Source: Macrostomum lignano (taxonomy: Eukaryota). From it: a stretch of DNA of 64,000 nucleotides. Made by a program: the position numbers and the translations under genes. The DNA lies in the NCBI GenBank assembly GCA_002269645.1, contig NIVC01002026.1, positions 62,001 to 126,000 on the forward strand, read 5' to 3'. The notes below the pieces were generated by a model. The model saw only the letters and a program-made list of their open reading frames with translations, searched no databases and was not told the origin of the DNA. Position 1 is the stretch's first letter, and each line of letters opens with the position of its first letter. Positions 1-57,902 of the stretch are shown one piece after another.

Positions 1-807
1 ATAATTACTGCTTGAGGTTGAGCTGGCCTCTCTAACCACCCGCTCCCTACAGCTCAAGACTGCGTTTTGTCCTAAATAAGCCATTGTTGCCATGCTTGAA
101 TCTCAGAATTTGATGGCTCTCAGGCCATTCAGTGCGGCTCAAAGCCTGTCTGTTGCTGCTGGCTGCAGGTGGCAGGAGTGCAAAATGCAGTGAGTTGCTG
201 CGGCCGAGAGCTGGACAGAATTGAGATGGGCTGCCAGAGCTCGGCTGCACTTTAATAATAAACAACTGATGAAGCCCGAGACTGCAATTGAGAGGCTGAG
301 CAGCTGCCTCTTGCGAAAATTTATGCATGTATAGTTGGTTCGATTCCGTGCGATTGGCCTGAGGCCATTCTCAGCCATGAAGGCCAACTTCTGAGGCTCT
401 GGCAGAATGGATTAGTTTCATTCTACACCGATATCAACTAAAGTCACTGTACTAATTGCATGCCTGTGCACTGTGCAGACAATGCGATAGGAATTCTAGG
501 ATTGCTTTTTTAGACTTCTGCTGGGTCACAGATTCATGGGAAATCAGTAGTTTTCAGGGCATATTGTATCGACCGAATTCTCTCTTCAAGGGAGGCGTTC
601 AATTCATTCTCTCTTCACACCTCTTCTCCCTTTAAATTTTAGACACTTTAGAGTCTTTAAGGCCCCACTTGCATAGCCGTAGCCATTTATTGACCATCCA
701 TATTTTTATTATTTATTGTTTTTCATCCATTCTATTTATTTGCTCCGGGTCTGCAGGACCTGTGTGCCATCGAACTCTGCTCTCAGCCACCAATCTGTTT
801 TTTAGAG

Positions 808-1203
808 TCTCTGACTCATCACACTGCACATGCACTCCATTCTCTGACTCATCACACTGCACATGCACTCCATTCTCTGACTCATCACACTGCACATGCA
901 CTCCATTCTCTGACTCATCACACTGCACATGCACTCCATTCTCTGACTCATCACACTGCACATGCACTCCATTCTCTGACTCATCACACTGTACATGCAC
1001 TCCATTCTCTGACTCATCACACTGCACATGCACTCCATTCTCTGACTCATCACACTGTACATGCACTCCATTCTCTGACTCATCACACTGTACATGCACT
1101 CCATTCTCTGACTCATCACACTGTACATGCACTCCATTCTCTGACTCATCACACTGTACATGCACTCCATTCTCTGACTCATCACACTGTACATGCACTC
1201 CAT
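808..1203. repeat. 33-bp minisatellite, about 12 copies
   Basis: Unit TCTCTGACTCATCACACTG(C/T)ACATGCACTCCAT recurs at 808, 841 and onward; it generates the spurious ORFs 669..1289, 713..1237 and 802..1203. Confidence 0.95.
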
Positions 1204-1427
1204 TTGCGCAGTGCTGTATGCGCTTGTACATGTACAAGTTTTTGCATTATCGATTTTTGCACCCTGTCATTATCACCTCTAAATATTGACGGCAACTCGC
1301 TCAAATAAACTCTGCTTTACTCGGCCTGACGAAGAATTTACAGTATTCTAAATATTATCAAATTGAACTGAACTGACTTTTATCAGTCCTTTTTACCGAG
1401 CCAGTGCCTGAGACTGGAGGTGCCCTT

Positions 1428-1532
1428 CTCTCTCCTCTCTCTCTCCCTCTCTCTCTCCCCTCTCTCTCCCTCTCTCTCTGTCTCTCTCTCTCTCTCCTCT
1501 CTCTCTCCCCTCTCTCTCCCTCTCTCTCTCTG

Positions 1533-1563
<31 letters not shown>

Positions 1564-1565
1564 CC

Positions 1566-1611
<46 letters not shown>

Positions 1612-1613
1612 TA

Positions 1614-1645
<32 letters not shown>

Positions 1646-1711
1646 CCCTCTCTCCCCCTCTCTCCCCCTCTCTCCCCCCTCTCTCTCTCCCTCTCTCCCC
1701 CCCTCTCTCTC

Positions 1712-1759
<48 letters not shown>

Positions 1760-1815
1760 CTTTCCCCCTCTCTCTCTCTCCCTCTCTCCCCCCCTCTCTC
1801 TCTCTCTCTCCCCCC

Positions 1816-1847
<32 letters not shown>

Positions 1848-1972
1848 TCTCTCGCCCTCTCTCTCTCTCTCCCCCTCTCTTTACCCCCCTCTCTCTCTCT
1901 CTCTCTCTCCCTCTCTTTCCCCCTCTCTCTCTCTCCCTCTCTCCCCCCTCTCTCTCTCCCTCTCTCTCCCCC

Positions 1973-2007
<35 letters not shown>

Positions 2008-2043
2008 TCTCTCGCCCTCTCTCTCTCTCCCCCTCTCTTTCCC

Positions 2044-2113
<70 letters not shown>

Positions 2114-2122
2114 CTCTCTCTC
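1428..2122. repeat. (CT)n / polypyrimidine low-complexity tract
   Basis: Almost exclusively C and T on the + strand. Confidence 0.95.
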
Positions 2123-4189
2123 TGCATACCTGTGTCTTATTCACCCATTCACCTTTGTATTCAGCACGCAAAACACGTGGCTCCGGAGAGCGCAGCCCTT
2201 TATTCCTCTTCAGTTCGCTATTTGATTTCCAATAGCCATGCATTTAAACTTGATAATGATGGCACTTGAAGAGATGCGAAAGGTTTGTCTTGTTCAAGCC
2301 AAATCCAAGTCTTCAGTGCAGCAGTGCCGAATGCACCTGCAGGGCACTCCTAGTTGCAGAAGTGATCATGCAAAAGGCTCTCCAGCTCACATCAGGTTGT
2401 CCCCCCAGTTCACGTTTATGGAAATCAATAATTTTGCTTCAGAGTGACAAAATATACATGTGCACAGATTCTTAAATGATGTACATCTATGAATTTAGCC
2501 ATGCACACATGTATGTACATGTCTACGAGTATGTAGAATTCTTGGCTTTGTTCCCTCCACAAAATCCATGGCGACGCCCCTGGCCTCTACGAGTATCTTG
2601 GTGCCTCAAGAACGCGCTGCTTTTACTTTTTAGCTGTGCTTAACAGTAGAAACTACCAAGAATTCCCCAATTCCCCCCTGACAATTTTTTTTGCTGCGCC
2701 GGAACGGAGCCGGAACGGAGGCACACGAAGTTCAAGAACATGGGCTAACTTTTTGTTGCGCACCTTCTCAAAAAAGAATCAAATCGCCAGCCCTCCGGGC
2801 CGTCGAGATATTCGACGATTCTGCCAGAAGGTCGGATTTTCCCATAAGCGCCAGTGTATTCAGTACACCCCTGTGCGCCAATCAGCACTACGCCTCAGTG
2901 CAGCCTTGCTATAAGCCTCCAAATTTCATCAGCACGTCGACCACATGTGTCTGCATCAGCTCTGACTTCGTTGGTCACTGGCCTTCACCCAGACGGAGCT
3001 TCTGGACCTTCAAACAGGTGGCAGCAGGTGACTGCGGACACCCTCTGATACGAATTTCTCGAGTTTCGCTGGTAAAAATCAACTGCTGGACATCCTCAGC
3101 TGGTCTCTCAAGCATTCCTTCATCACCCTGACGCCGTCGGCACCTTCAACAGATGACATCAGCAGGCGACTATGGACATTCTGTTGCAGCTATGTCAGAT
3201 TTTTCTTATCAAGCTTGAATAATGAGCAAAGCTCAACTGCTAGGCACCCTCAACTAGTTTCTCAAGCAGTTGGTCGGCATTCAGCCGTCTTTGGCAGCTT
3301 CAAGGAGACGAAACCATGACTATGGACAACCATAAGAGATAGTTTTTGATTGTTTGCATTTTAGTAACTTATATTTAAGACAGAATACTTAGATATTTCT
3401 GAGCAAATTCTGAGCAAATTCTGAGCAAAAACATACTGGATAAAACATACTGGAACCGGAGCTCGATACATACGATCGATATTTATCATTGCCTTTCGGA
3501 CTTGCAGGGTGGAACCTTGGATGACAGAACAATTTTCTGACACGTCAGAGGTCTGGCAGTCAGGGCCTATGTACTATTAATTGTCAGCTGTGTGAGCTAG
3601 TACATGCACATGTATACTGGTTGATTCACGGACAAACCCCCTATTTACAAAGACATGCATAAACAGTTCGCAATGCTACTTAATTAACTTGCGCACATGT
3701 GAGCGGCATCTTTAAATAATTTCAGAGAAGTTATTCTGCATACTAGATTGAACCTGTAAATTGTAGGCAAAAAGCAAACCAGGTACTCCAGTTAACCAAC
3801 TTTTGGGTTGCTTTGTTCAAATGGAATATGCGAACTGGTTCAATCAAATGTTTTATGAAGAGATCACGCCAAAAATCATGAAATCAAGAGTCAATCAGCC
3901 GAACCATCTTTCAATCTGTCAATCAATCAACCAATCAATCAATCAATTAATCAATCAATCAGTGGAAGGGTCAAGTGCGGCGTTTCGCCTGCTGTCAGGT
4001 TAAAATTGAAAGCCGCTGCTTTCTGTCTGTTTTTCTGAGCTCTGTGGAGCTTCGGCAGTTTTGAGTGACGATTTGAAAACTCTTGCTCCTGCTGAACTCA
4101 GAGACTTCTAGACTGGAATTTCTTGCAAACTGCTGCTAATGATCCTTGGCTAAACTATGACCCACCTGCTAATAAAAGGAAAGTGTTTC

Positions 4190-4810
<621 letters not shown>

Positions 4811-4976
4811 CCCTATAGACAGATAAACAGACAGACCGACACAAGCCTCATTCATTTCAATTGGCCCGTGCCAGCGCTGACAATAGCACACAATTGTGAC
4901 GCAAATAAGCAAAAACAGTTAAATTCCAGCAAAATGCGGCGCTCTCCGCAATGCACAGCACCGATACCAAGCCGAA

Positions 4977-7900
4977 ATGGAAGCTCTTTGGAGAATCCTG
5001 ACAGCGATTGCAGCAGTTCTGATGCAGACCTTCGGCAGGTCCGCAGGCCAAAGCGAGGGCCTTGATGGCACTGAGCAGGAGATCCTGGAAGCTGTTATGT
5101 TCGAAAATGAAACAAAAGTTTCACGATACCTGCAGACGCCTCATAACGTTGATAGGCTCTTCAGCATCAATGGGATGATATTCTCACCGCTTCACTTTGC
5201 GTGTGAAAAGGGAAAAGACAAAATTGTCGAAATGTTCATTCGAGCCCAAGCTGACGTCAATCTTCAACTAAACACTGGCGAGTCACCTCTATACATTGCA
5301 TCACAGGAGGGTCACCACCAAGTTGTGAGCTCACTCATCAAAGCACAAGCTGACGTCAATCTTCAACAAGTCGATGGCCGCTCACCTCTCTACATTGCAT
5401 CACAGAATGCTCACCGCCAAGTTGTGAGCTCACTCATTAAAGCACAAGCTGACGTCAATCTTCAACGAAACACTGCTGAGTCACCTCTCTACATTGCATC
5501 ACATAATGGTCACCACCAAGTTGTGAGCTCACTCATCAAAGCACAAGCTGACGTCAATCTTCAACGAAACACTGGCGAGTCACCTCTCTACATTGCATCA
5601 CAGAAGGGCCACCACCAAGTTGTGAGCTCACTCATCAAAGCACAAGCTGACGTCAATCTTCAACGAAACACTGCTGAGTCACCTCTCTACATTGCATCGA
5701 TTTTTGGTCACCACAAAGTTGTGAGCTCACTCATCAAAGCACAAGCTGACGTCAATCTTCAACGAAACAATGGCGAGTCACCTCTCTACATTGCATCACA
5801 GAATGGTCACCACCAAGTTGTGAGCTCACTCATCAAAGCACAAGCTGACGTCAATCTTCAACGAAACACTGCTGAGTCACCTCTCTACATTGCATCAGGG
5901 AAGGGTCACCATCAAGTTGTGAGCTCACTCATCAAAGCACAAGCTGACGTCAATCTTCAACTAAACACTGGCGAGTCACCTCTCTACATTGCATCACTGC
6001 AAGGTCATCACCAAGTAGTAAGCTCACTCATCAAAGCACAAGCTGACGTCAATCTTCAACAAGATGATGGCTGCTCACCTCTCTACATTGCATCACAGAA
6101 TGGTCACCACCAAGTAGTGAGCTCACTCATCAAAGCACAAGCTGACGTCAATCTTCAAGACGTCGATGGTTGCTCACCTCTCTACATTGCATCACAGAAT
6201 GGTCACCACCAAGTTGTGAGCTCACTCATCAAAGCACAAGCTGACGTTAATCTTCAAGAAGTCGATGGCTGCTCACCTCTTTACATTGCATCACAGAATG
6301 GTCACCACCAAGTTGTGAGCTCACTCATCAAAGCACAGGCTGACGTCAATCTTCAACGAAACACTGGCGCGTCACCTCTCTACATTGCATCACTGCAAGG
6401 TCACCACCAAGTTGTGAGCTCACTCATCAAAGCACAAGCTGAAGTCAATCTTCAACGAAACACTGGCGAGTCACCTCTCTACATTGCATCACTGCAAGGT
6501 CACCACCAAGTTGTGAGCTCACTCATCAAAGCACAAGCTGACGTCAATCTTCAACGAAACACTGGCGAGTCACCTCTCTACATTGCATCAGGGAAGGGTC
6601 ACCACCAAGTTGTGAGCTCACTCATCAAAGCACAAGCTGACGTCAATCTTCAACGAAACACTGGCGAGTCACCTCTCTACATTGCATCAGGGAAGGGTCA
6701 CCACCAAGTTGTGAGCTCACTCATCAAAGCACAAGCTGAAGTCAATCTTCAACGAAACACTGGCGAGTCACCTCTCTACATTGCATCACAGAATGGTCAC
6801 CACCAAGTTGTGAGCTCACTCATCAAAGCACAAGCTGACGTGAAGGGTGTACATATTGATTGTCAAGAAGTGGCTAAAAGTACATTCGCTGTGGAGTTGC
6901 CACCGAAACAGTTAGATTTTGGGTAAGATTCATTTTTGATTCTAAATAACTATTTTGATTAGTTTTTCACGGATCCGAAGAAGATTAGGCAATTGTGCAA
7001 GCAAGCGGTCATGAGAGGCAGTGTTGGCAGTTGGCAGTTTGCAGCAGAAAAGCTTGCAAACAGGTGAAAGCGAGAGCTTGCTGAATGCTGAGTCAAGATG
7101 AATTTAACATGGCTGATATCACAGGCAAGTATATGTGCTCACGGGGTTTATCCCTGTTGCAAGTAAATGCAATGTGAATGTGGAGTTCAGGACCCCATCT
7201 GCCGCCATCCCCATAATCGGCATCGTCAGCAAATCAGGTTTTCCGATTTACTCGGACCGCTCAGACCTGTTCGACCAATAAAGTTCCCTCGTAACCATGC
7301 CACTCTACAGACACTCTAATGGGCAGTCACGGAAATTGGACCATTTTCAGGGGCACACATTTTCTCCGGACACTGGGCTCACCTATGGACCCACCTTCAG
7401 CATGCTCCAGTCCACCTCCAGCATGCCCCACCCCACCTCCAGCATGCCCCACGCCACCTCCAGCCTGCCCCACCCCTCCTCCGGCCTGCTCCACTCTACA
7501 TCCAGGTCTCTGAATCTAAAGTATCAAATCCTCATCGCTGAATCAACTCTTTTCCCACCTGCCAACCATACACAGACACTCTGCATGGGACACTGTATGG
7601 GCAGTCATGGAAATTGTACAATTTTTCAGTAACAAAGCATGCACACATTTGCTCTAAACTAAACTAAAAGAACAATTAAAGGATCAACTGCCTGCAAAAT
7701 GATCAGCAAAATCAATTCATGCACTGTTCGGGAGGGCTGCCCTGTGCTACAAAAATCAGTCAAATAACCCGTCTAGACCTGCAAGTTTTTCACCTATAAC
7801 TCACATTTCAGATGCAGTCCCAGCGACTCAGAGCTGAGCCATCAGCTGCACTCAGCACTGGAGCAGTCAGGCTTCACCGAATCCCGAGCCGCATTGCAGA

Positions 7901-9969
7901 GCGCGGCTGCCGATGTCCTGCAGCAGATTCTGAGAAGTCGACTGGATGATAATCCATTTTTTGTGGTCGGCAGCTACTCAGAAGGCTGGGGCAACAACCT
8001 GACGACACTGGACGGCAGAACTGACGCCAATTCCGACATTGATGTGATGCATTTGATTTCTGGCCGAGAATACCACCAGAAAAGTCTGTGCGAGTGCGAT
8101 GGAGCTTCGGAGCAGCACGAGCTGGTGAACGGGCACATTCAGTGCTCAGGATTCGGTGAGTTCTCTCTTGGGGAGTGAGATTGTCTGGTAGTTTTGTTAT
8201 GACTGTTAGAGATTGCTAAGAAAACTTGGCAAGATTGTTGGTTTTAAATTTTTGTAGGATTGGTAAAAGTGGAGCAATGCTATGGAGGACTCAGTGAAAA
8301 ACTGTTCATTTTAGCAGCTTTTTGCATTTTTAGGTAAGAAGACTCGAATTTAGGGAACTTATAGGTAGCCTGTGACCTCTCCGTAGTGAGTTTAGGGTGG
8401 GTGCAAATATCGTGTCATTTGGTTGGGCGGTTTCTAAAGCTGCATATTTCCCGAACAGTCCAAGGCATCACCGCACAGACTCAAAGCTGTATATTCCCCA
8501 ATCGGGAACCGAATCGTTTTTACAGCCTCCAACCCTGCTCATGCGACACCCGGATGCCCGCTGAGGCCAGCGCTGGACAATGTCGACGCATGCCGTCTCT
8601 GCCGCTACCCGCCCATCACGCCGCTGCTGCCAAACCGCGTCTCCAACATCCCCCATCCGGTGTTGGAGGCTCTCCAGAAGGTTCTCACCTCCGCCTCATC
8701 GCCCTGTCACGTGGTGCACGCAGCCTCTCCTGACCGAGGAGGCGAAGAGCTCCGCGTGAGCACCAGCTTCCTGGAGAACCGGATGCTGCGAAGTCTCACT
8801 ACCCTGCAAGGCCAACTGTTCGTCACACTCAAATACCTGGTCAAGAAGGTCATCTGTCACAAGAATGGCTTGAATTCCTACCACGTGAAGACCATCGCCT
8901 TCCGAATGGTGGCTGAGACGCCGGTCGAGCAGTGGAAGAAGGAGAACCTCGTGAGTCTCACGAGACAGTCGCTGCAGATGCTGCTCGACTGTGTGGAGAA
9001 GAGCCGAGAGCAGGACAGACAAACACCTGACACACCTGACCGATCTCGGGTCGCATCATGAATCATTTCTTTCTCAGCGATGCGGCCATCTACCTCAAGG
9101 GTGCGGACAAGGAGAGAGCGGACCAGCATTTGGACGGCATCATGAGCACACTGAGAACAGGAATCGATCGGCTGCCCCAACTGCTGCAGCAGTTCATCGG
9201 CAGTCTCAGACCTGTGAGCGACTCAGGCACATTCTACTTCCACCCGTTCCAAATCCTGCCGGATCTGAGGCCGATGTCCCTCACGAAGTCCAGTGCTCTC
9301 GAGTACTATCAGATCTACGACGTGGTGAGAGAGTGTCTGGTGCGTCTCTCGCGCAGTGACTGCAGCCAGCGATCTCAGGAGTCGCTCACAGAGCTGATTG
9401 CCAGACTGCCAGACTGCACCCTCTCAGCACGGGAGGCTCTCAGAGCGCTGGCTTGCCTGAAGTTCGGCTACCGAGAAACTGCAGAGAGAGTCGTGAGCTC
9501 GTGCTTAGGTCACTCGGTGAGCAGAGGCATCGCTTGGTCTCGTGAGAAGTCGGCGACTGAAGCGACTGTGGAGTTCGTGATGCGGCATCTGAGCAGCCGC
9601 GACTCGGCGTGGAAGTTTTGCTTTGAGTTCGACCAGCGACCGAAACTCGAGTTCTTGACAGGAGCTCTGAGGGAGTGCTTTCCCCTCCGGTTGTCGAGCA
9701 GAGCTGACCATTTCTACATGAACTTTGATGCTCTGCTGTGGGCTCTGCGGCTCGAGCTGCGGACTGATCGAGAAGCGTGCGCTCAGGACTGGATCCGGGA
9801 TGTGGCTGAGAGAGAGGACTCGGATGAGCAGGAGGTGCTGGTTGCCGCTTTGAATTCTTCAAATCTGGAGCAGATTCTGGAAATAGTAAAGAAGCTGAAG
9901 ATGATGAGGGCAGATCTTCTCAGTTGGCTGAAGGCGAGACTTCTGGAAAAATGGAGCGATCGAACTTAG
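4977..9969 (+). CDS. Ankyrin-repeat + Mab-21/cGAS-like nucleotidyltransferase (cGLR-type) fusion protein, about 1244 aa; exons 4977-6922, 7812-8155, 8526-9969; apparent 1-nt frameshift at 9048-9050
   Basis: Exon 1 has 17 ANK repeats (SPLYIAS..GHHQVVSSLIKAQADVNLQ). Donor GG|gtaag at 6922 joins acceptor tttcag|A at 7812 in phase 2 (GGA). Donor G|gtgag at 8155 joins acceptor tttacag|CC at 8526 in phase 1 (GCC). Motifs: VGSYSEG...SDIDVM, VDAC, ELRVSTSFLENRML, LKY, SYHVKT, W, NHFF, matching the order in Mab-21/cGAS-family proteins. One extra G at 9048-9050 gives DRSRGRIMNHFF and a total of 3735 nt. Confidence 0.85.
5184..6845 (+). repeat. Coding 99-bp tandem array: 1 divergent + 16 near-identical ankyrin repeats
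   Basis: 33-aa periodicity in ORF 4977..6926; the DNA units differ at only a few codons. Confidence 0.95.
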
Positions 9970-11069
9970 GAAGTTTCGAGTAAAAAACAAAAACTGTTTT
10001 GCTGGTGAGCTGGTAATTAATATTTCTATTTTCCCAAATTATCCGACTGCTCTGATATTCCTCTTCCATTTTCGCATTGAGTCGGCATCCCCGAGAACTT
10101 CAGCTCATTAACATGTACTTTACTGCCATCTGGGTCATTGTCCTTGAATTCGTTGGAAATTTCGATTTTTTAAACAAAATTTTCAGTGTAACATTTTGTT
10201 ATAAATGTCTCATTATCGAATTTAGCAAATTCCGCTTCATCAGTAGCTTACTGACCGCTTTCGCACTCGGATATTTTATGACTTCACGGTGCTTCAGTTC
10301 CACCGCGTTTTGACTGCTGCAGTAGAAATGGTAAAATACCATTTAGCCAGTCAGCCATATAATTCTGAGATACGAGCATGATGACAATGGCTTATTTTTG
10401 TCAAAATAAGTGAGCGCAGTCTTGAGCCGTAAGGAGCGGGTGGTTAGAGAGGCCAGCTTAACCTCAAGCAGTAATTATGCTATTCTCAGGCTGCACATCG
10501 CTCTTCTAGCCTCCCTGCAACCAGCGATGCTGTGCTCGGTGTGTTTTGAGCAGTGAGCTGGATGGAGTTGCATTCTAGCCAGACTTGTTTTTTGTCTCTG
10601 AGACAGGGGGGTTGGCGTTTCGAGAGGCGTTTCGAGAGGCCTGTATGGGGCAGTTGCCAACTCAAAGCAGTCTCATCGCAATGCAGACAAAGCACTGCCA
10701 CTGCTGAGCTGGGTGGGGCCGCTCCAGATGAAGGTTGGAGACTGCAGGCGCGTTTTTAGTGCTTTGCTTTTGCAATGTCGCCTCCGGCGTTTTTGGCAAT
10801 TTTGGCTTTGGTTTTTCAAAACGCAAAACGCATTGAAATGAGAGATGAAGGTCATCTGCAGACCCTTACTCAAATTAATAAGCTGTCGCAGGAGGGCTGC
10901 AGCCACCCTGGCACAACGCCTTCGGCGACCTCAGTCCCACATCCCACGGCAATTCAGCCCATTCCGCTAAATCCTGAGCCATGCAAGCTCGCCAATGCTG
11001 TACGCAGGCACTCATGCACAGTGGTCCCACAGGGTGTACAGCGGCCCTAACTTTCTCATCGTCTAATCA

Positions 11070-21919: not shown

Positions 21920-23275
21920 TCATGGCATCCAGTGCTCAATCATGCACTCTACCGTTCTCAGCGAGTAGCTCTGGCCCAGAGAACTGGGACACCCGACGCA
22001 GTGGTACATCATTGGCATCTGGGCGTAGTGCACACTCAAGGCTGTCGGGTGGTCAAAGTAGATGCCGTTCGGATTGAAGAAAGTACAATATCCGAACCAC
22101 CAGCCTCCGTGACGCTCTAAAGCGCAATTATCCGGACTCAAATCGTTATCGGAGTCCGGGGTGGAAAACTGATTACCCTGAATGCCAATGTCGCTAGTCG
22201 TCATGGCCTGTCCAATGCTTGAAGCGGCAGAGTCAAACTCGCCAATGACAGCTCGGTACTTGTCCTTGGGCCCGGACACGGTGAAGTTCAAGTTCTCCGT
22301 CCAGTACCATTTTTGTCCCAATCGCTCAGCTCCCAACGGACCCGGCGACCTCCGTGTTTGGTGAGCTGGTGAATCTGCTCAAGGCCCAGCCAGAAATTGT
22401 CGGCTTCTTCTAAGCCAAATCCAGTAGAGTAGTCGGTCCAGTTCTTATCGAAGCTCAGGTTGCTGCTCACGCGATGCTGGAATGTCTTCCAGTAGTTGAA
22501 TTGGCCCGATGGTTGTGCTCGGATCTGCGTTATGAAAGCATTTTGGAACGTAATAGAAGACCAGAGAAAACAGAAAAAAATCCGTGTTGCAGACACGTGT
22601 ACTCACCCAGACTTGAGTCACGGTAGCATCTACACGAATAGCATTCCTGCACTTTCTACAACCGTTCGGCCCCCTGTTGCACACAAACTCATGACAGGTC
22701 CGGTTGTGGAGAGGAGATGGAGGAGAGAGGAGAAAAGATGGAGGAGAGAGAGGAGAGGGGATGGAGGAGAGAGGAGAGGAGATGGAGGAGAGAGGAGAGG
22801 AGATGGAGGAGAGAGAGGAGAGGGGATGGAGGAGAGAAGAGAGGAGATGGAGGAGAGAGGAGAGGAGATGGAGGAGAGAGGAGAGGAGATGGAGGAGAGA
22901 GAGGAGAGGGGATGGAGGAGAGAAGAGAGGAGATGGAGGAGAGAGGAGAGGAGATGGAGGAGAGAGGAGAGGAGATGGAAAAGAGAGAAGAGGAGATGGA
23001 GGAGAGAGAGGAGAGGGGATGGAGGAGAGAGGAGAGGGGATGGAGGAGAGAGGAGAGGGGATGGAGGAGAGAGGAGAGGGGATGGAGGAGAGAGGAGAGG
23101 GGATGGAGAGAGAGGAAGCGTCGCAGATATGCAAACAAAAAACAGCAAGATAGGGTAAACTTTCTGGTAAGGAAGTGGCATTCTGATATCCCGGTTGCAG
23201 ACCATCAGCGCTGTGAACAGCTGCGGAAATAGAAGACAAAATAAGCAGATACCAAACGATTGATACGAAATTCAT
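21920..23275 (-). CDS. Fibrinogen-related (FReD) protein; intron 22525-22606; 1-nt frameshift at 22310-22314; 5' structure uncertain
   Basis: WKTFQHR, SFDKNWTDYSTGFG, NFWLGLEQIHQLT, FSTPDSDND, NCA, GGWWF, C and NPNG are fibrinogen C-terminal domain motifs. TGG|gtgagt (22607) and gcag|ATC (22524) join in phase 0. ORF 23275 starts with a signal-peptide-like MNFVSIVWYLLILSSISA. Confidence 0.8.
22710..23112. repeat. GA-rich degenerate minisatellite within the FReD locus
   Basis: Units like GGAGAGAGGAGAGGAGATGGA. Confidence 0.9.
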
Positions 23276-25706: not shown

Positions 25707-27121
25707 TTAGTTCTTCCTTGTAAAAAAGGAACCGATTTTGATGTCACTCAAAACTTTAGACACATTAACCAGTTCGAGGGCGTACTCACGAGTTTTCATC
25801 GCGGTGCCACCCCAGCTCGTTTCGCTCTTCCGCATGTCGTGAACAGCGTACACAGTTGGCGACGAGTCTGTAACAGGGTTGTAATTGGTGATGTTTGAGC
25901 ACAGCTGCGTCAGGTTCTTCACCTTTCTGAGAAGCTTCATGCTGGAGTCTTTGGTGTCGTTCAGTTTCCTGCAGCTAATGCTCATCTTGGACAGTCGATA
26001 GTTTCGAAAATTCGTCGAAACGCCGCTCAAAGAGTTGTTCTCGTACGGATAGAAGCTGAACGATGGCGGCACGTACACCGCTTCCATCGAGTCGTTTGTC
26101 AGCGGATGCTTGGCATTGTACCGCTCCAAGATTCTCGTCAGTCCAACTGGTCCAGCAAAGCCGAGAATGTCCCAGTTCGGCCGAATGAGAGACAGCTGGT
26201 CGAGCACAAACCTGTAGAACTTGTGCCCTGGCGCAGACATGAGGAAGGCGGGACTGGCCACAGGTCTAATGGGCCAGTGAGGCCCGAACAGCTGCAGCGA
26301 GTGCGTCTCCGGCTCGCGAGTGACCACCGCGTAGAAGCGACGAAACTCGTCCAGGTTTCGCGTCAGGCTGTAGTCCAGGTCTGCGTACGTGCCGCCGAGC
26401 TTCAAAAACCCAAAAATATTTCTGTATGATTTCCGCTTAAAAAGAAGTCAACTGCATGCTTTAGGAGCGTAAAAGGTAATTTTTAATTGAGGAATAAGTA
26501 AATATGACTAGTATAGTGTTTCAGTATTCTGTGAATGCTCGATAGTGCTTTACCTACCTTATACATCAGCATGTAGCGGAACATGTCAACCTTCATGATG
26601 TGCATCTTCTGAGACTTGAATTGCTTCAACAGTTTGGGAAAATTTTCAGCCACGAATGGATCCATATCCTTGTCGCGCCACAGCACGTGGATCCAATCGG
26701 GGTGAAGTTTCTGCCAAGTTTTTATGTGCTCGACAAAGTACTTGGACACGAACTCGTTGCGCCAGAGAATGTGCCGGATCTTCGGTATCGGGAAGATGCC
26801 TCTTTTGTGCAGGCTGGTCTCGTAGTCCAGCCGGCAGCTCTCGTTTGCGCAGACAGCCGGCAGCCAAGTCTTTGGTTTCAATTGTACTTTTCTGTTTGGT
26901 AATTTCGATGTTAAGTCGGATTGAATCAGAGTAGCATTTCCTCCATTCCTGTTGAATGCATTGAACAAGGTGGCAAGAAAAACCGGATGCCTGCTTGTCT
27001 TTGTCGACAGCGTCGCTATCTGAGTTATTGCGGCGTAGACCAGTAGAATAACGAAAACAGCAAACAGAATTTTGCGCCACTTGTCGCATCGAAACTTTTG
27101 GACTTTTACGAAAAAAATCAT
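25707..27121 (-). CDS. GT32-family DxD glycosyltransferase, type II membrane; exons 27121-26558 and 26399-25707
   Basis: N-terminal TM segment ILFAVFVILLVYAAI; motifs IPKIRHILW, HPDW..VLW.D, VDMFRY, YK|LGGTYADLD; phase-0 GT-AG intron (aag|gtaggt ... tttgaag|CTC). Confidence 0.85.
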
Positions 27122-27644
27122 TTTTATCAAACGGTGGCTTTTTAAATCCACTTATTTTTGCACTTGTATTTTGTAAAATGCTTTCCTAGCAGACTAATTA
27201 AGACGTCCTATTTCGACTTCTGTTTTTTACCTTGCTTATTTCAATCACCGATTGGCTATTCCAACTAATCCACAATCACTGGCCAAACCATTCTGTCCGG
27301 AGAGGTATCTACGTCAGTCTAGCTCCTTACCGGTGCGCTATCAGTTTGGGATAGGACAAATCGGGTAGCTCATTCCTACCTGACCAAGCCTAGAAATGTA
27401 CATTCTGTAACCGTCCACGGATGAATTGGGGCTTTCTGCATTAAATTTTAAGATAGCTGGAGTTTGCGTTAAATACATCCAACTTCCTGAAGGAATAAAG
27501 TAAGGCTTTTTCTGAAACTTCTTTTTTCAATTTCTGGACTCCTATATTAACATCTTCTCTGTCGTTTTCAAGTCATTAAGACTTCGTTGCTGCGGTTATT
27601 CGTTGTCAATGTCTGTTGTGTTGGAGCGAGTCTGGTATTGTCTG

Positions 27645-29037
27645 GATGAATGAATAAATGGATGGATGGATGGATGCATGGATGGATGGATGGATGGATG
27701 GATGGATGGATGGATGGATGGATGGATGGATGGATGGATGGATGGATGGATGGATGGATGGATGGATGGATGGATGGATGGATAGATGGATAGATGGATG
27801 GATGGATGAATGGATGGATGGATGGATGGATGGATGGATGGATGGATGGATGGATGGATGGATGGATGGATGGATGGATGGATGGATGGATGGATGGATG
27901 GATGGATGGATGGATGGATGGATGGATGGATGGATGGATGGCTGGATGGATGGATGGATGGATGGATGGATGGATGGATGGATGGATGGATGGATGGATG
28001 GATGGATGGATGGATGGATGGATGGATGGATGGATGGATGGATGGATGGATGGATGGATGGATGGATGGATGGATGGATGGATGGATGGATGGATGGATG
28101 GATGGATGGATGGATGGATGGATGGATGGATGGATGGATGGATGGATGGATGGATGGATGGATGGATGGATGGATGGATGGATGGATGGATGGATGGATG
28201 GATGGATGGATGGATGGATGGATGGATGGATGGATGGATGGATGGATGGATGGATGGATGGATGGATGGATGGATGGATGGATGGATGGATGGATGGATG
28301 GATGGATGGATGGATGGATGGATGGATGGATGGATGGATGGATGGATGGATGGATGGATGGATGGATGGATGGATGGATGGATGGATGGATGGATGGATG
28401 GATGGATGGATGGATGGATGGATGGATGGATGGATGGATGGATGGATGGATGGATGGATGGATGGATGGATGGATGGATGGATGGATGGATGGATGGATG
28501 GATGGATGGATGGATGGATGGATGGATGGATGGATGGATGGATGGATGGATGGATGGATGGATGGATGGATGGATGGATGGATGGATGGATGGATGGATG
28601 GATGGATGGATGGATGGATGGATGGATGGATGGATGGATGGATGGATGGATGGATGGATGGATGGATGGATGGATGGATGGATGGATGGATGGATGGATG
28701 GATGGATGGATGGATGGATGGATGGATGGATGGATGGATGGATGGATGGATGGATGGATGGATGGATGGATGGATGGATGGATGGATGGATGGATGGATG
28801 GATGGATGGATGGATGGATGGATGGATGGATGGATGGATGGATGGATGGATGGATGGATGGATGGATGGATGGATGGATGGATGGATGGATGGATGGATG
28901 GATGGATGGATGGATGGATGGATGGATGGATGGATGGATGGATGGATGGATGGATGGATGGATGGATGGATGGATGGATGGATGCATGGATGGATGCATG
29001 GATGGATGGATGGATGGATGGATGGATGGATGGATGA
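27645..29037. repeat. (GGAT)n microsatellite, about 1.4 kb
   Basis: Direct reading. Confidence 0.98.
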
Positions 29038-29679
29038 TGGACCATATTGGCTGTTTGAGCTAGTTGCCTATGCAGTGCTAACAACTCGTGTGCCATCTCA
29101 TTGAAACTAATCACTGAGCACCCTGGCCTCCCATGCTCAAATAAAATCGATGGAAGGTAGCGAGGTTGCTAAGCCAGGAAAATGTGAGAAAAGCAGAGCT
29201 GGCTAGCGACGCAAACCAAATCTTGTCGAATTCGAGCTTGCGAATAGTTGTAAGGATACAAGTGTTTTATTTATCATAGATTTATTTATCTTTTTCTTAT
29301 CGATCTTCCGATTGGATGGCTGGTCCCCAGTAGAGTTAGCTCATAGTAACTTTGATGGGATTCTGTCGACTGTAAGACATCTGGAGTGACTATCGATCCA
29401 TGGCTATCGATAAAGCATACATAGTTATTGAAAATTTAAGACGACATGCCCAGCTGTCGTAAGCATTGGTCGAGCCTCTTTTTTTAAACCCGTGCGGGGT
29501 TGAGTATCAAATTTGTGAAATGAACTACTTAGAGTAGCAACGGTGATTTCTTACCTCGGTAAATATCAGATAGAAGCGCAAAAACACTCGACCACTGAGA
29601 ATCTCTCACTCTCGCTCACTCTCTCAAGTCACTGACGATTTCTAGGAGTCACTTAAAATGTCTGAAGGTCACTGAGAAT

Positions 29680-29899: not shown

Positions 29900-32800
29900 A
29901 CTGCACTTGATAAGCCAAGGATTACTGCACTTGATAAACTAAAAATAATTGCACTTGATAAGCCAAAGATTATTGCACTGGATAAACCAAGGATTATTGC
30001 ACTTGATAAACCAAGGATTATTGCACTTGCTAAGCCAAAGATTATTGCACTTGATAAACCAAGGATTATTGCACTTGATAAAACAAGGATTATTGCATTT
30101 GATAAGCCAAGGATTACTGTACTTGATAAACCAAGGACTACTGCACTTGATAAACCAAGGATTATTGCATTTGATAAGCCAAGGATTACTGCACTTGATA
30201 AACCAAGTATTATTGCACTTGATAAACCAAGGATTATTGCACTTGATAAACCAAGTATTATTGCACTTGATAAACCAAGGATTATTGCACTTGATAAACC
30301 AAGGATTATTGCACTTGCTAAGCCAAAGATTATTGCACTTGATAAACCAAGTATTATTGCACTTGATAAACAAGTATTATTGCACTTGATAAACCAAGGA
30401 TTATTGCACTTGATAAACCAAGGACTACTGCACTTGATAAACAAGGATTATTGCACTTGATAAACCAAGGATTATTGCACTTGCTAAGCCAAGGATTATT
30501 GCGATTGATAAACAAGGATTATTGCACTTGATAAACCAAGGATTATTGCACTTGCTAAGCCAAGGATTATTGCGATTGATAAACCAAGGATTATTGCACT
30601 TGATAAACCAAGGATTATTGCACTTGATAAACCAAGTATTATTGCACTTGATAAACCAAGGATTATTGCACTTGATAAACCAAGGATTATTGCACTTGAT
30701 AAGACAAGGATTATTGGTTAAGGATTAAGCCAAGGATTATTGCGCTTGATAAGCCAAGGATTATTGCGCTTGATAAACCAAGGATTATTGCACTTGATAA
30801 ACCAAGGATTATTGGTTAAGGATTAAGCCAAGGATTATTGCGCTTGATAAACCAAGGATTATTGCACTTGATAAACCAAGGATTATTGCACTTGATAAAC
30901 CAAGGATTATTGCACTTGATAAACCAAGGATTATTGCACTTGATAAACCAAGGATTATTGGTTAAGGATTAAGCCAAGGATTATTGCGCTTGATAAACCA
31001 AGGATTATTGCACTTGATAAGCCAAGGATTATTGCACTTGATAAACCAAGGATTATTGCACTGGATAAACCAAGGATTATTGCACTTGATAAACCAAGGA
31101 TTATTGGTTAAGGATTAAGCCAAGGATTATTGCGCTTGATAAACCAAGGATTATTGCACTTGATAAACCAAGGATTATTGCACTTGATAAACCAAGGATT
31201 ATTGCACTTGATAAACCAAGGATTATTGCACTTGATAAACCAAGGATTATTGCACTTGATAAACCAAGGATTATTGCACTTGATAAACCAAGGATTATTG
31301 CACTTGATAAGCCAAGGACTATTGGTTAAGGATTAAGCCAAGGATTATTGCGCTTGATAAGCCAAGGATTATTGCGCTTGATAAACCAAGGATTATTGCA
31401 CTTGATAAACCAAGGATTATTGGTTAAGGATTAAGCCAAGGATTATTGCGCTTGATAAACCAAGGATTATTGCACTTGATAAGCCAAGGATTATTGCACT
31501 TGATAAACCAAGGATTATTGCACTGGATAAACCAAGGATTATTGCACTTGATAAACCAAGGATTATTGGTTAAGGATTAAGCCAAGGATTATTGCGCTTG
31601 ATAAACCAAGGATTATTGCACTTGATAAACCAAGGACTACTGCACTTGATAAACAAGGATTATTGCACTTGATAAACCAAAGATTATTGCACTTGCTAAG
31701 CCAAGGATTATTGCGCTTGATCAACCAAGGATTATTGCACTTGCTAAGCCAAGGATTATTGCACTGGATAAACCAAGGATTATTGCACTTGATAAACCAA
31801 GGATGATTGCACTTGATTAACCAAGGATTATTGCACTTGATAAACCAAGGATTATTGCACTTGATAAACCAAGTATTATTGCACTTGATAAACCAAGGAT
31901 TATTGCACTTGCTAAGCCAAGGATTATTGCGCTTGATCAACCAAGGATTATTGCACTTGCTAAGCCAAGGATTATTGCACTTGATAAACCAAGTATTATT
32001 GCACTTGATAAACCAAGGATTATTGCACTTGATAAACCAAGGATTATTGCACTTGATAAACCAAGGATTATTGCACTTGATAAACGAAGTATTATTGCAC
32101 TTGATAAACCAAGGATTATTGCACTTGATAAACCAAGGATTATTGCACTTGATAAGCCAAGGACTATTGGTTAAGGATTAAGCAAAGGATTATTGCGCTT
32201 GATAAGCCAAGGATTATTGCGCTTGATAAACCAAGGATTATTGCACTTGATAAACCAAGGATTATTGGTTAAGGATTAAGCCAAGGATTATTGCGCTTGA
32301 TAAACCAAGGATTATTGCACTTGATAAACCAAGGATTTTTGGTTAAGGATTAAGCCAAGGATTATTGCGCTTGATAAACCAAGAATTATTGCACTTGATA
32401 AACCAAGGATTATTGCACTTGATAAACCAAGGATTATTGCACTTGCTAAGCCAAGGATTATTGCACTTGATAAACCAAGTATTATTGCACTTGATAAACC
32501 AAGGATTATTGCACTTGATAAACCAAGGATTATTGCACTTGATAAACCAAGGATTATTGGTTAAGGATTAAGCCAAGGATTATTGCGCTTGAAAAGCCAA
32601 GGATTATTGCGCTTGATAAACCAAGGATTATTGCACTTGATAAACCAAGGATTACTGCACTTGATAAACCAAGGATTATTGCACTTGATAAACCAAGGAT
32701 TATTGCACTTGCTAAGCCAAAGATTATTGCACTTGATAAACCAAGTATTATTGCACTTGATAAACCAAGGATTATTGCACTTGATAAACCAAGTATTATT

Positions 32801-33895
32801 GCACTTGATAAACCAAGGATTATTGCGCTTGATCAACCAAGGATTATTGCACTTGATAAACCAAGGATTATTGGTTAAGGATTAAGCCAAGGATTATTGC
32901 GCTTGATAAGCCAAGGATTATTGCGCTTGATAAACCAAGGATTATTGCACTTGATAAACCAAGGATTATTGCGCTTGATCAACCAAGGATTATTGCACTT
33001 GATAAACCAAGGATTATTGGTTAAGGATTAAGCCAAGGATTATTGCGCTTGATAAGCCAAGGATTATTGCGCTTGATAAACCAAGAATTATTGCACTTGA
33101 TAAACCAAGGATTATTGCACTTGATAAACCAAGGATTATTGCACTTGATAAACCAAGGACTACTGCACTTGATAAACAAGGATTATTGCACTTGATAAAC
33201 CAAGGATTATTGCACTTGCTAAGCCAAGGATTATTGCGCTTGATCAACCAAGGATTATTGCACTTGATAAACCAAGGATTATTGCACTTGATAAACCAAG
33301 TATTATTGCACTTGATAAACCAAGGATTATTGCACTTGATAAACCAAGGATTATTGCACTTGATAAACCAAGGATTATTGCATTTGATAAACCAAGGATT
33401 ATTGCACTTGATAAGCCAAGGACTATTGGTTAAGGATTAAGCCAAGGATTATTGCGCTTGATAAGCCAAGGATTATTGCGCTTGATAAACCAAGGATTAT
33501 TGCACTTGATAAACCAAGGATTATTGCACTTGATAAACCAAGGATTATTGGTTAAGGATTAAGCCGAGGATTATTGCGCTTGATAAGCCAAGGATCAATG
33601 CGGTTGATAAACCAAGGATTATTGCACTTGATAAACCAAGGATTATTGGTTAAGGATTAAGCCAAGGATTATTGCGCTTGATAAACCAAGGATTATTGCA
33701 CTTGATAAACCAAGGATTATTACACTAGATAAACCAAGGATTATTGCACTTGCTAAGCCAAGGATTATTGCACTTGATAAACCAAGTATTATTGCACTTG
33801 ATAAACCAAGGATTATTACACTTGATAAGCCAAGGATTACTGCACCTGATAAGCCAAGGATTATTGCACTAGATTTGAAAGGATTATTGCACTAG
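29900..33895. repeat. 24-bp satellite GGATTATTGCACTTGATAAACCAA, about 4 kb, with interspersed variant units
   Basis: Period 24 (31201 and 31225); recurring variant GGATTATTGGTTAAGGATTAAGCCAA. Confidence 0.97.

Positions 33896-35483: not shown

Positions 35484-57902
<22,419 letters not shown>

What the first reader, a model, noticed from the sequence alone, without database searches (positions are those of the whole stretch)
5184..6845. Natural DARPin-like hypervariability with combinatorial cassette reuse in the ankyrin array
Seen: the 16 homogeneous 99-bp units differ almost only at two sites. After IAS the pairs are QE, QN, HN, QK, IF, QN, GK, LQ, QN, QN, QN, LQ, LQ, GK, GK, QN. The preceding hairpins are LNTGE, QVDGR, RNTAE, RNTGE, RNTAE, RNNGE, RNTAE, LNTGE, QDDGC, DVDGC, EVDGC, RNTGA, then RNTGE four times. 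Changes are multi-nucleotide blocks (cagaat, gggaag, ctgcaa, attttt), reused in different pairings: RNTAE with HN/IF/GK, RNTGE with QK/LQ/GK/QN, LNTGE with QE/LQ. Established: these are the beta-hairpin and first-helix binding-surface positions randomised in DARPin libraries. Inference: unequal crossover or gene conversion shuffles specificity cassettes within a homogenised scaffold, reminiscent of VLR LRR modules or TALE variable residues.
Basis: partly seen in the sequence, partly recalled or inferred. Interest (0 to 1): 0.85.

Follow-up and report, generated by a model that had tools for sequence, protein, structure and literature searches.

The report
Hypervariable ankyrin array in flatworm cGAS-like gene
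Sixteen near-identical 99-bp ankyrin repeats in a Macrostomum lignano gene differ almost only at the residues that ankyrin proteins use to bind partners, a pattern of repeat homogenisation plus binding-face diversification already known from fungal immune receptors, here attached to a cGAS-like enzyme domain.

Summary
There are sixteen in-frame 99-bp units at 5253-6836. Variation sits in 7 of 33 codons: 19 of 21 nucleotide columns vary there against 14 of 78 elsewhere. Those codons are ankyrin positions 1-5 and 13-14, and five of them are positions randomised in DARPins.

At these codons the changes are nonsynonymous (20 of 21 variant codons; dN 0.55). The scaffold is under purifying selection (dN 0.010, dS 0.083).

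The array is exon 1 of a three-exon Macrostomum lignano gene. Exons 2 and 3 encode a Mab21/cGAS-like nucleotidyltransferase with a conserved GS and three-Asp motif. It belongs to a flatworm family already catalogued among cGAS-like receptors.

Hairpin and helix variants are re-assorted between units, but only a few exchanges are needed, and ordinary unequal crossover in a coding minisatellite explains them. 41% of this window is tandem repeat. No donor cassettes flank the gene, so the VLR analogy has no support.

The same regime is published for fungal NLR ankyrin repeats, and I also see it in mollusc ankyrin arrays. Verdict: real and non-random, a new member of a known kind. The array could not be checked in a second assembly.

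The parts
4194..4808 (.). (TGTC)n microsatellite of about 154 copies, ending 169 bp upstream of the start codon
   Evidence: TRF
4977..6922 (+). Exon 1. It runs from ATG 4977 through an N-terminal leader, one diverged ANK repeat, 16 homogenised ANK units and a 29-residue tail, to the donor GG|GTAAGA. The in-frame TAA at 6924 lies inside the donor site.
   Evidence: ORF. N-terminus conserved in paralogues P0005, P0022, P0153. Splice phase joins exon 2 in frame. The junction LDFG|CSPSDSELS matches paralogue P0122 EPEFE|CSLSDSELS.
5184..5252 (+). Diverged first ANK repeat (SPLHFACEKGKDKIVEMFIRAQA), cap-like
5253..6836 (+). 16 x 99-bp homogenised ANK units. Each reads D/E-V-N-L-Q-[xxxxx]-SPLYIAS-[xx]-GHHQVVSSLIKAQA. 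The hypervariable blocks are nucleotides 16-30 and 52-57 of every unit.
6923..7811 (+). Intron 1. It contains a 21-bp minisatellite at 7390-7505, where the older assembly contig diverges from the window.
7812..8155 (+). Exon 2: start of the Mab21/cGAS-like domain, with the nucleotidyltransferase motif VVGSYSEGWGNN...SDIDVM
   Evidence: tblastn with paralogues; gene model; 100% identical to P0121
8526..9969 (+). Exon 3: rest of the Mab21/cGAS-like core (third conserved Asp in RPALDNVDA; Mab-21_C lobe KSYHVKT...HFFL) plus an alpha-helical C-terminal extension of about 250 residues. Stop at 9967-9969.
9047..9049 (+). GGG homopolymer, one base shorter than in assembly GCA_002269645.1 (GGGG). As written it frameshifts exon 3 in the window.

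Best explanation
The region is a coding minisatellite. It consists of sixteen 99-bp ankyrin-repeat units in exon 1 of a Macrostomum lignano gene whose product (about 1,244 aa) joins an N-terminal ANK solenoid to a C-terminal Mab21/cGAS-like nucleotidyltransferase. Unequal crossover and gene conversion between units keep the scaffold nearly uniform. The same processes generate the many non-coding minisatellites of this genome, and they duplicate, delete and recombine units. Replacements at the beta-hairpin tip (ANK positions 1-5) and at the end of the inner helix (positions 13-14) are retained by diversifying selection, because these residues line the concave groove that ANK domains use to bind partners. 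The outcome is a recognition surface that can change specificity quickly, through point changes and through re-pairing of hairpin and helix variants, on a constant fold. By analogy with cGAS-like receptors and fungal NLRs, the ANK surface probably acts as the ligand sensor that controls the nucleotidyltransferase. Shown here: the anatomy, the site-specific excess of nonsynonymous change, the purifying selection on the scaffold, the re-assortment, the gene model and the fold of the C-terminal domain. Inferred: selection as the cause, germline unequal exchange as the mechanism, and a sensor or immune role.
For: Units and hypervariable codons. Hypervariable codons have dN 0.55 and dS 0.22; the scaffold has dN 0.010 and dS 0.083 (omega 0.12). 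The hypervariable pN of 0.39 exceeds the scaffold pS of 0.079 fivefold, which neutral relaxation cannot produce. Scaffold variants are 4 nonsynonymous to 11 synonymous, p = 8e-5 against neutrality; the hypervariable-versus-scaffold contrast gives p = 2e-5. Hypervariable positions match the DARPin paratope positions (p = 5e-4). In diverged paralogues the outer-face positions 17, 18, 21, 22, 25 and 27 are the most variable (2.4-3.5 bits), yet they are almost invariant in this array. So only binding-face variation survives homogenisation. Four-gamete incompatibilities and Rm = 3. The LQ and IF pairs are absent, and GK is seen once, among 155 units of 33 family members, where QN is the default (66 of 155). 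These states therefore arose in this array and were then copied within it. 41% of the window is tandem repeat. Gene model and identity to M. lignano P0121. C-terminal domain: AF2 model with pTM 0.83; Foldseek top hits are cGAS, MB21D2, MAB21L1 and Sp-cGLR1, all at probability 1.00. The profile hits Sp-cGLR1 at E = 2e-4. S50, D71, D73 and D128 are at least 90% conserved. Relatives are listed among cGLRs cloned by Li et al. 2023. Published precedent for the evolutionary regime: PMC4986451.
Against: Only one copy of the array is available. The older assembly has a satellite of at least 9.3 kb (118-bp period) where the ANK exon should be. No predicted protein in the 5.8-billion-protein database carries this array. 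Polymorphism, repeat-number variation and even correct assembly are therefore untested. dN/dS inside the hypervariable block rests on about 5 synonymous sites, and gene conversion violates the assumptions of the estimator. The window copy carries a 1-nt frameshift in exon 3, so this particular copy could be a recent pseudogene. Exon 1 to exon 2 splicing is inferred from phase and from paralogue models, not from transcripts. No ligand, enzymatic activity or expression data exist.
Confidence: 0.6

Rival explanations
1. Neutral young minisatellite. The array expanded very recently from a few already-diverged units. The variable positions are simply the least constrained surface residues, with no diversifying selection.
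For: The genome generates minisatellites everywhere (41% of the window). Units 14 and 15 are identical and units 12 and 13 nearly so. Adjacent units tend to be more alike (8.1 against 9.5 differences, p = 0.08).
Against: Nonsynonymous divergence at the hypervariable codons (pN 0.39) is five times the synonymous divergence of the scaffold (pS 0.079), and 20 of 21 variant codons are replacements. Equally exposed outer-face positions that drift freely in paralogues are invariant here. Derived pairs such as GK, LQ and IF need 3-5 nucleotide changes from QN.
Confidence: 0.15
2. Targeted diversification machinery. A dedicated germline or somatic mechanism (VLR-like cassette assembly, or templated or hypermutation patches) writes multi-nucleotide blocks into the two sites.
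For: Changes are contiguous multi-nucleotide blocks. For example, TC[ACAGAA]T becomes TC[GATTTT]T in unit 5, which includes the adjacent synonymous base.
Against: No partial ANK cassettes or unit fragments occur elsewhere in the 64 kb. No reverse transcriptase or deaminase gene is evident among the ORFs scanned. The reuse seen needs only about three exchanges. The hairpin classes (xxDGC, RNTGE-like) are old and shared with paralogues.
Confidence: 0.05
3. Assembly artefact or dead gene. The array is a chimeric or mis-sized reconstruction of reads from several paralogues, or it lies in a pseudogene, so its pattern has no functional meaning.
For: The independent assembly does not place the ANK exon upstream of exons 2-3. 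The window has at least one homopolymer error or mutation in the same gene. M. lignano carries many 83-90% identical paralogues. A 90% paralogue model lacks the array.
Against: 1,946 bp of exon 1 remain open with no indel across 16 units. 15 of the 16 units are distinct yet differ in a codon-aware way (scaffold omega 0.12), which random mis-joining of paralogues would not produce. Paralogue scaffolds differ from this one (P0002, P0122). The other assembly has the exon 3 frame intact.
Confidence: 0.15

Closest known systems
Highly internally conserved ANK/TPR/WD repeats of fungal NOD-like receptors (Podospora Pa_3_8560, HET-E/D/R, NWD family; Dyrka et al. 2014 PMC4986451; Paoletti et al. 2007 PMC1805685)
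   Same: Repeats at least 85% identical to one another. Variation and positive selection are confined to a handful of positions on the concave face (inner helix and beta-hairpin for ANK). Evolution is concerted, with repeat shuffling. The repeats are fused to an immune-type effector or signalling domain.
   Different: This is an animal, not a fungus. The partner domain is a Mab21/cGAS-like nucleotidyltransferase, not a NACHT/NB-ARC NTPase. The ANK array is N-terminal rather than C-terminal. Repeat-number polymorphism is not yet shown. Dyrka et al. found only 0.8% of metazoan repeats to be highly internally conserved.
cGAS-like receptors (cGLRs), including the minority with ANK fusions (Li et al. 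2023, PMC9980059)
   Same: Mab21/cGAS fold with GS and an acidic triad. Li et al. list ANK-cGLR as a domain architecture. M. lignano relatives of this gene are in their cloned set.
   Different: There is a long insertion between GS and the Asp-x-Asp (20 residues) and an extra C-terminal helical domain of about 250 residues. No product or ligand is known. Hypervariability of the ANK part was not described in the text or supplements I searched.
DARPin libraries (designed ankyrin repeat proteins)
   Same: A constant 33-residue scaffold with diversity at positions 2, 3, 5, 13 and 14 forming the paratope.
   Different: DARPins are designed, not natural. They also randomise positions 33 and 26 and keep positions 1 and 4 fixed. 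The window varies 1 and 4 and keeps 33 and 26 fixed. The DARPin positions were themselves chosen from natural ANK variability, so the resemblance is expected (my own knowledge of Binz et al. 2003).
PRDM9 zinc-finger minisatellite and TALE repeat arrays
   Same: Coding tandem arrays homogenised by unequal exchange, in which only the contact residues vary and units are shuffled (PRDM9 is described as a rapidly evolving minisatellite in PMC8925151; TALE variable di-residues from my own knowledge).
   Different: These have different folds and bind DNA with a one-unit-one-base or triplet code. Nothing suggests a code here.
Lamprey VLR assembly
   Same: A solenoid repeat protein with a variable concave surface.
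   Different: VLR diversity comes from somatic copy-choice out of flanking cassette banks. No cassettes are present in this window and no somatic evidence exists.

Membership tests
Ankyrin repeat (Pfam Ank / Ank_2) | 33-residue helix-turn-helix-hairpin motif matching the Pfam models above gathering score | tested here: met
   Ank scores 366 bits in 17 stretches and Ank_2 scores 375 bits. phmmer to ankyrin and DARPin PDB chains gives E down to 1e-112.
Highly internally conserved repeat arrays with hypervariable binding face (fungal-NLR type) | Repeats at least 85% identical over at least 100 aa | tested here: met
   Mean pairwise unit identity is 0.87 over 16 x 33 aa.
Highly internally conserved repeat arrays with hypervariable binding face (fungal-NLR type) | Variable or positively selected sites restricted to the concave face (hairpin and inner helix) | tested here: met
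   Amino-acid entropy peaks only at ANK positions 1-5 and 13-14. The face assignment comes from alignment to DARPin modules, not from a structure of this protein.
Highly internally conserved repeat arrays with hypervariable binding face (fungal-NLR type) | Codon-model evidence of positive selection | tested here: inconclusive
   Nei-Gojobori dN/dS is 2.5 in the hypervariable block, and hypervariable dN over scaffold dS is 6.6. Variant codons are 20 nonsynonymous to 1 synonymous against 4 to 11. No recombination-aware site model was run, and there are few synonymous sites.
Highly internally conserved repeat arrays with hypervariable binding face (fungal-NLR type) | Repeat-number or repeat-order polymorphism between individuals | not testable with these tools
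   The only other assembly lacks the exon at this place. No allele was found in the protein databases.
NOD-like receptor (STAND NTPase) | Central NACHT or NB-ARC NTPase domain | tested here: not met
   Pfam finds only Ank families and Mab-21_C. The gene is not an NLR.
cGAS-like receptor / Mab21 superfamily | Bilobed Mab21/cGAS nucleotidyltransferase fold | tested here: met
   The AF2 model (pLDDT 78, pTM 0.83) hits cGAS, MB21D2, MAB21L1 and Sp-cGLR1 at probability 1.00, with TM about 0.5 on the target.
cGAS-like receptor / Mab21 superfamily | Sequence match to Mab-21 models at the curated threshold | tested here: inconclusive
   Mab-21_C scores 22.6-25.0 bits against a cut-off of 24.1, depending on the member. 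The profile hits Sp-cGLR1 at E = 2e-4 and cGAS at 1e-3.
cGAS-like receptor / Mab21 superfamily | Active-site G-S and three acidic residues | tested here: met
   G49-S50, D71, D73 and D128 (P0121 numbering) are at least 90% conserved across 17 family members. They sit on the expected strands of the model. Equivalence to the cGAS catalytic residues is inferred, not aligned residue by residue.
cGAS-like receptor / Mab21 superfamily | Ligand-activated synthesis of a nucleotide second messenger | not testable with these tools
   This needs biochemistry. M. lignano relatives were cloned by Li et al., but none is mentioned in the main text I searched.
VLR-type somatic cassette assembly | Banks of partial repeat cassettes flanking an incomplete germline gene | tested here: not met
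   There are no tblastn or blastn matches to ANK units outside 4.9-7.0 kb in the window. This test is limited to 5 kb upstream and 57 kb downstream.

The most novel reading that the evidence does not exclude
Macrostomum ANK-cGLR genes form a rapidly diversifying, possibly highly polymorphic receptor repertoire. In it a protein-binding ankyrin surface, encoded by a coding minisatellite that mutates at minisatellite rates, gates cyclic-nucleotide signalling in place of a nucleic-acid-binding surface. That would be an animal counterpart of fungal NLR allorecognition and effector-sensing loci, built on the cGAS pathway, in a phylum said to lack most cGLRs.
Probability: 0.2. Interest if true: 0.8.

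Novelty: new member of a known kind. Interest (0 to 1): 0.5.

Why it matters
If the array is polymorphic and the protein is an active cGLR, this would be a tractable animal example of a germline-diversifying recognition module coupled to second-messenger synthesis. M. lignano is a transgenic laboratory flatworm. It would extend the scheme of homogenised scaffold plus hypervariable face from fungal NLRs to metazoan cGAS-like sensors. It would also suggest that some orphan cGLRs sense proteins through ANK surfaces rather than nucleic acids. Natural specificity-determining residues on a near-consensus ANK scaffold are also of practical interest for binder engineering. If the array is monomorphic or mis-assembled, it is merely one of many coding minisatellites in a genome that is 41% tandem repeat in this window.

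Tried and rejected
1. Exact-product look-up of the exon 1 ORF found nothing on record.
2. A second copy of the array was sought in three ways. The full-length search gave no hit above 61% identity. The search with the N-terminal 130 aa gave only two weak, unrelated hits. The older assembly contig (L001) matches the window at 99.8% from 7431 onward, but upstream it carries a satellite of at least 9.3 kb with a 118-bp period instead of the ANK exon. No comparison of the array was possible.
3. An AlphaFold single-sequence model of the cap plus seven units came out all-beta (pLDDT 82.6; the five models ranged 45-83). It had no significant PDB neighbour. I rejected it as an artefact of folding a perfect repeat without an alignment, because the sequence matches ankyrin and DARPin chains at E = 1e-112. 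Mapping of the variable sites therefore rests on alignment to DARPin modules.
4. A PDB profile search with the full-length family alignment was swamped by ANK hits. It was repeated with an alignment of the C-terminal domain only.
5. VLR-like donor cassettes are absent from the window.
6. The idea that GK, LQ and IF were imported from paralogues is not supported, because those pairs are essentially absent from 155 family units.
7. dN/dS across paralogue arrays was not attempted. Paralogue arrays are 40-65% identical at protein level, and DNA for the one other homogenised array (P0002) is not held.
8. A literature search for Macrostomum with Mab-21, cGAS or ankyrin found no paper on this family.
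Full report
**1. The observation.**
Reading from the ATG at 4977, the + strand is open for 649 codons. From 5253 to 6836 it consists of sixteen exact 99-bp units. Each encodes D/E-V-N-L-Q-[5 variable]-SPLYIAS-[2 variable]-GHHQVVSSLIKAQA. TRF gives period 99, 16.2 copies, 91% matches and no indels.

**2. Is it more than chance?**
- 33 of the 99 nucleotide columns vary. Nineteen of these lie in the 21 columns of unit codons 6-10 and 18-19, and 14 lie in the other 78 (Fisher p = 1e-9). Nucleotide diversity is 0.35 against 0.027.
- Pooled Nei-Gojobori estimates over the 120 unit pairs give dN 0.55 and dS 0.22 in the seven hypervariable codons. The scaffold gives dN 0.010 and dS 0.083, so omega is 0.12.
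- Counted as variant codon states, the hypervariable codons carry 20 replacements and 1 silent change. The scaffold carries 4 and 11 (Fisher p = 2e-5). The scaffold ratio departs from neutrality at p = 8e-5.
- Two things follow. The scaffold is under purifying selection, so this is not junk. Replacement divergence at the seven codons (pN 0.39) is five times the silent divergence of the surrounding sequence (pS 0.079), which relaxed constraint alone cannot produce.

**3. Where the variable residues sit.**
- The protein is an ankyrin array beyond doubt. Pfam Ank scores 366 bits in 17 stretches, and ankyrin and DARPin chains in the PDB match with E down to 1e-112.
- In the DARPin register (D-x-x-G-x-TPLHLAA-x-x-GH...) the unit reads [R][N][T][G][E]SPLYIAS[Q][N]GHHQVVSSLIKAQADVNLQ.
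- I aligned the six internal modules of DARPins off7 and 16, whose sequences are printed in PMC6130421. The designed variable positions are 2, 3, 5, 13, 14, 26 and 33. The window varies at 1, 2, 3, (4), 5, 13 and 14.
- Five of the seven coincide, which has p = 5e-4.
- These positions are the beta-hairpin tip and the end of the inner helix, the concave binding face (PMC8229355; PMC4986451).
- I could not confirm this on a model of this protein. The single-sequence AlphaFold run gave an all-beta artefact with no PDB neighbour.

**4. Cassette reuse.**
- There are 9 hairpin and 8 helix nucleotide haplotypes, in 15 combinations.
- RNTAE occurs with HN, IF and GK. RNTGE occurs with QK, QN, LQ and GK. 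LNTGE occurs with QE and LQ.
- At nucleotide level, hairpin column 26 against helix columns 52, 53 and 57 shows all four gametes. On strictly biallelic columns Hudson-Kaplan Rm is 3.
- Avoiding exchange would need two- to three-nucleotide parallel changes, so exchange between units is the economical reading.
- The effect is modest. Treated as two multi-state characters the combinations are still compatible with a tree. Only three hairpins and three helix pairs recur. The excess similarity of adjacent units is not significant (p = 0.08).
- Unequal crossover with breakpoints inside a 99-bp unit produces exactly such chimeric units. No special machinery is needed.
- No ANK fragments occur elsewhere in the window, so a VLR-type cassette bank is not present within 5 kb upstream or 57 kb downstream.

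**5. What the array belongs to.**
- The stop after codon 649 lies inside a consensus donor (GG|GTAAGA, exon end 6922).
- Exon 2 (7812-8155, acceptor ttcag|A) continues in frame. Exon 3 (8526-9969) follows a GTGAGT...acag intron.
- The conceptual product of exons 2 and 3 is 100% identical to P0121, 'hypothetical protein BOX15_Mlig022050g1, partial [Macrostomum lignano]'. The window is therefore M. lignano.
- As written, the window has GGG at 9047-9049 where assembly GCA_002269645.1 has GGGG, which frameshifts exon 3. This is either a homopolymer error or a null allele.
- Paralogues P0002, P0003, P0005, P0010, P0022, P0033 and P0126 show the same architecture: ANK array, linker and a domain of about 600 aa. 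P0122 supports the exon 1/exon 2 junction.

**6. The C-terminal domain.**
- Pfam gives only a borderline Mab-21_C hit.
- An AlphaFold model built on 25 family sequences (pLDDT 78, pTM 0.83) matches cGAS, MB21D2, MAB21L1 and the coral cGLR Sp-cGLR1, all at Foldseek probability 1.00.
- A family profile hits Sp-cGLR1 at E = 2e-4 and cGAS at E = 1e-3.
- The nucleotidyltransferase signature is conserved in at least 90% of 17 members: G49-S50, D71-x-D73 and D128.
- An extra helical region of about 250 residues follows.
- HMMER against 1.8 billion representative proteins finds 178 relatives, 96 of them below 1e-10. All but one of the named relatives from the word-based search are M. lignano.
- Li et al. 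2023 state that most platyhelminths lack cGLRs and that a minority of cGLRs are fused to ANK repeats. Their supplementary list of cloned cGLRs includes M. lignano proteins carrying this family's motifs.
- The gene is therefore a member of an already catalogued, lineage-expanded ANK-cGLR-like family.

**7. Comparison with paralogues and other arrays.**
- Among family members only the window array (mean unit identity 0.87) and P0002 (0.89) are homogenised. P0002 varies in the hairpin only. The other paralogues are 0.4-0.65.
- In the diverged arrays the most variable positions include the outer-face residues 17, 18, 21, 22, 25 and 27. In the window array these are essentially fixed.
That sharpens the contrast rather than removing it: after homogenisation only binding-face differences persist.
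- QN is the family default at positions 13-14 (66 of 155 units). LQ and IF are unique to this array and GK is seen once elsewhere. These states therefore arose here and were then copied within the array.
- The phenomenon is not special to this gene. Eleven other ANK proteins among the hits have internal identity of about 0.8 or higher. They include Mytilus coruscus P0013 (a CARD and STAND-NTPase protein), oyster P0115 and several unnamed eukaryotic proteins. They vary mainly at positions 3, 5, 10, 13 and 14.

**8. Mechanism and rivals.**
- Best supported: a coding minisatellite evolving in concert by unequal exchange, with diversifying selection keeping replacements on the recognition face. 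This genome is 41% tandem repeat in this window, and the scaffold identity of about 97% is in the range of the neighbouring non-coding arrays.
- The neutral rival fails on pN(hypervariable) being far above pS(scaffold) and on the invariant outer face.
- A dedicated diversification machinery has no positive evidence.
- An assembly artefact cannot be excluded, because the only other assembly places a 118-bp satellite where the ANK exon should be. But an open, indel-free 1.9-kb exon with codon-aware variation argues against it.

**9. What is known, and novelty.**
- Dyrka et al. 2014 (PMC4986451) describe ANK, TPR and WD repeats of fungal NLRs with at least 85% internal identity, repeat-number polymorphism, and positive selection at positions on the concave face (inner helices and hairpin). 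They report such repeats as rare in metazoa, at 0.8%.
- PRDM9 zinc-finger minisatellites and TALE repeats are functional analogues.
- The window array meets the sequence criteria of this kind. It is not an NLR, because it has no NACHT or NB-ARC domain.
- It is a new member of a known kind. The new elements are the animal host and the cGAS-like partner domain.

**10. Verdict.**
- The DARPin-position claim is supported.
- The shuffling claim is supported in a modest form.
- The VLR analogy is not supported.
- Interest is moderate (0.5). The gene is a good candidate for a diversifying protein-sensing cGLR in a laboratory flatworm, but polymorphism, expression and activity are all untested, and the evolutionary regime itself is established.

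Noticed in passing
window 1-64000: 41% of the window lies in tandem arrays (86 TRF rows). Examples: (TGGA)350 at 27643-29041, a 24-bp unit x165 at 29902-33893, (TC)355 at 1427-2123, and a roughly 1,830-bp unit repeated three times at about 46.7-52.2 kb, each copy containing its own 55-bp and 21/45-bp minisatellites.
   Followed up: partly
window 9047-9049: GGG here against GGGG in GCA_002269645.1 (NIVC01001460.1). The window copy of exon 3 is frameshifted while the other assembly is intact. Two further small differences in the 2.7 kb compared: T/C at 9063 and a 1-nt indel at 10089.
   Followed up: yes
L001 1-9606 (NIVC01001460.1 51843-61448) versus window 1-7430: The older assembly carries at least 79 copies of a 118-bp satellite (99% matches) directly upstream of the break, which falls inside the 21-bp minisatellite of intron 1. 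This is either a large structural difference or a mis-join at a repeat. The gene was annotated there as 5'-partial.
   Followed up: partly
window 37042-37776, 40386-40838, 56349-57902 (- strand): Exons of a class C GPCR (metabotropic-glutamate-receptor-like): 7tm_3 (E = 4e-68), NCD3G and ANF_receptor (E = 2e-66). They are spread over more than 20 kb, with introns full of minisatellites.
   Followed up: partly
window 21920-22336 (-) and 25707-27151 (-): A fibrinogen C-terminal domain fragment (E = 6e-14) and a DXD-motif glycosyltransferase (Gly_transf_sug), the latter as two adjacent ORFs.
   Followed up: no
P0153 and P0135 (M. lignano paralogues, 89-90% identical in the C-terminal domain): P0153 keeps the same N-terminus (MEALWRILTAIAAVLMQNFG...) but passes straight to the cGAS-like domain with no ANK array. 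P0135 retains a single unit (ADVNLRRNSGESPLYIAS). This is either array collapse in close paralogues or a gene-model artefact.
   Followed up: no
P0013, P0115, P0073, P0053, P0063, P0068 and others (hits): Mussel, oyster and unnamed eukaryotic ANK proteins, several carrying CARD, death or STAND-NTPase domains, also have arrays with about 0.8 or higher internal identity. Their variation is concentrated at ANK positions 3, 5, 10, 13 and 14.
   Followed up: partly
window 5154-5945 (protein model m012584d56ef5): AlphaFold2 without an alignment folded the near-perfect ANK repeat as a beta-solenoid with mean pLDDT 82.6. This is a confident-looking but wrong model, worth remembering when folding idealised repeats.
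   Followed up: yes
P0146: A 347-aa fragment of this flatworm family (41% identity) is deposited as a 'Kangiellaceae bacterium' MAG protein on a 1,065-bp contig. It is probably eukaryotic contamination of a metagenome bin.
   Followed up: no
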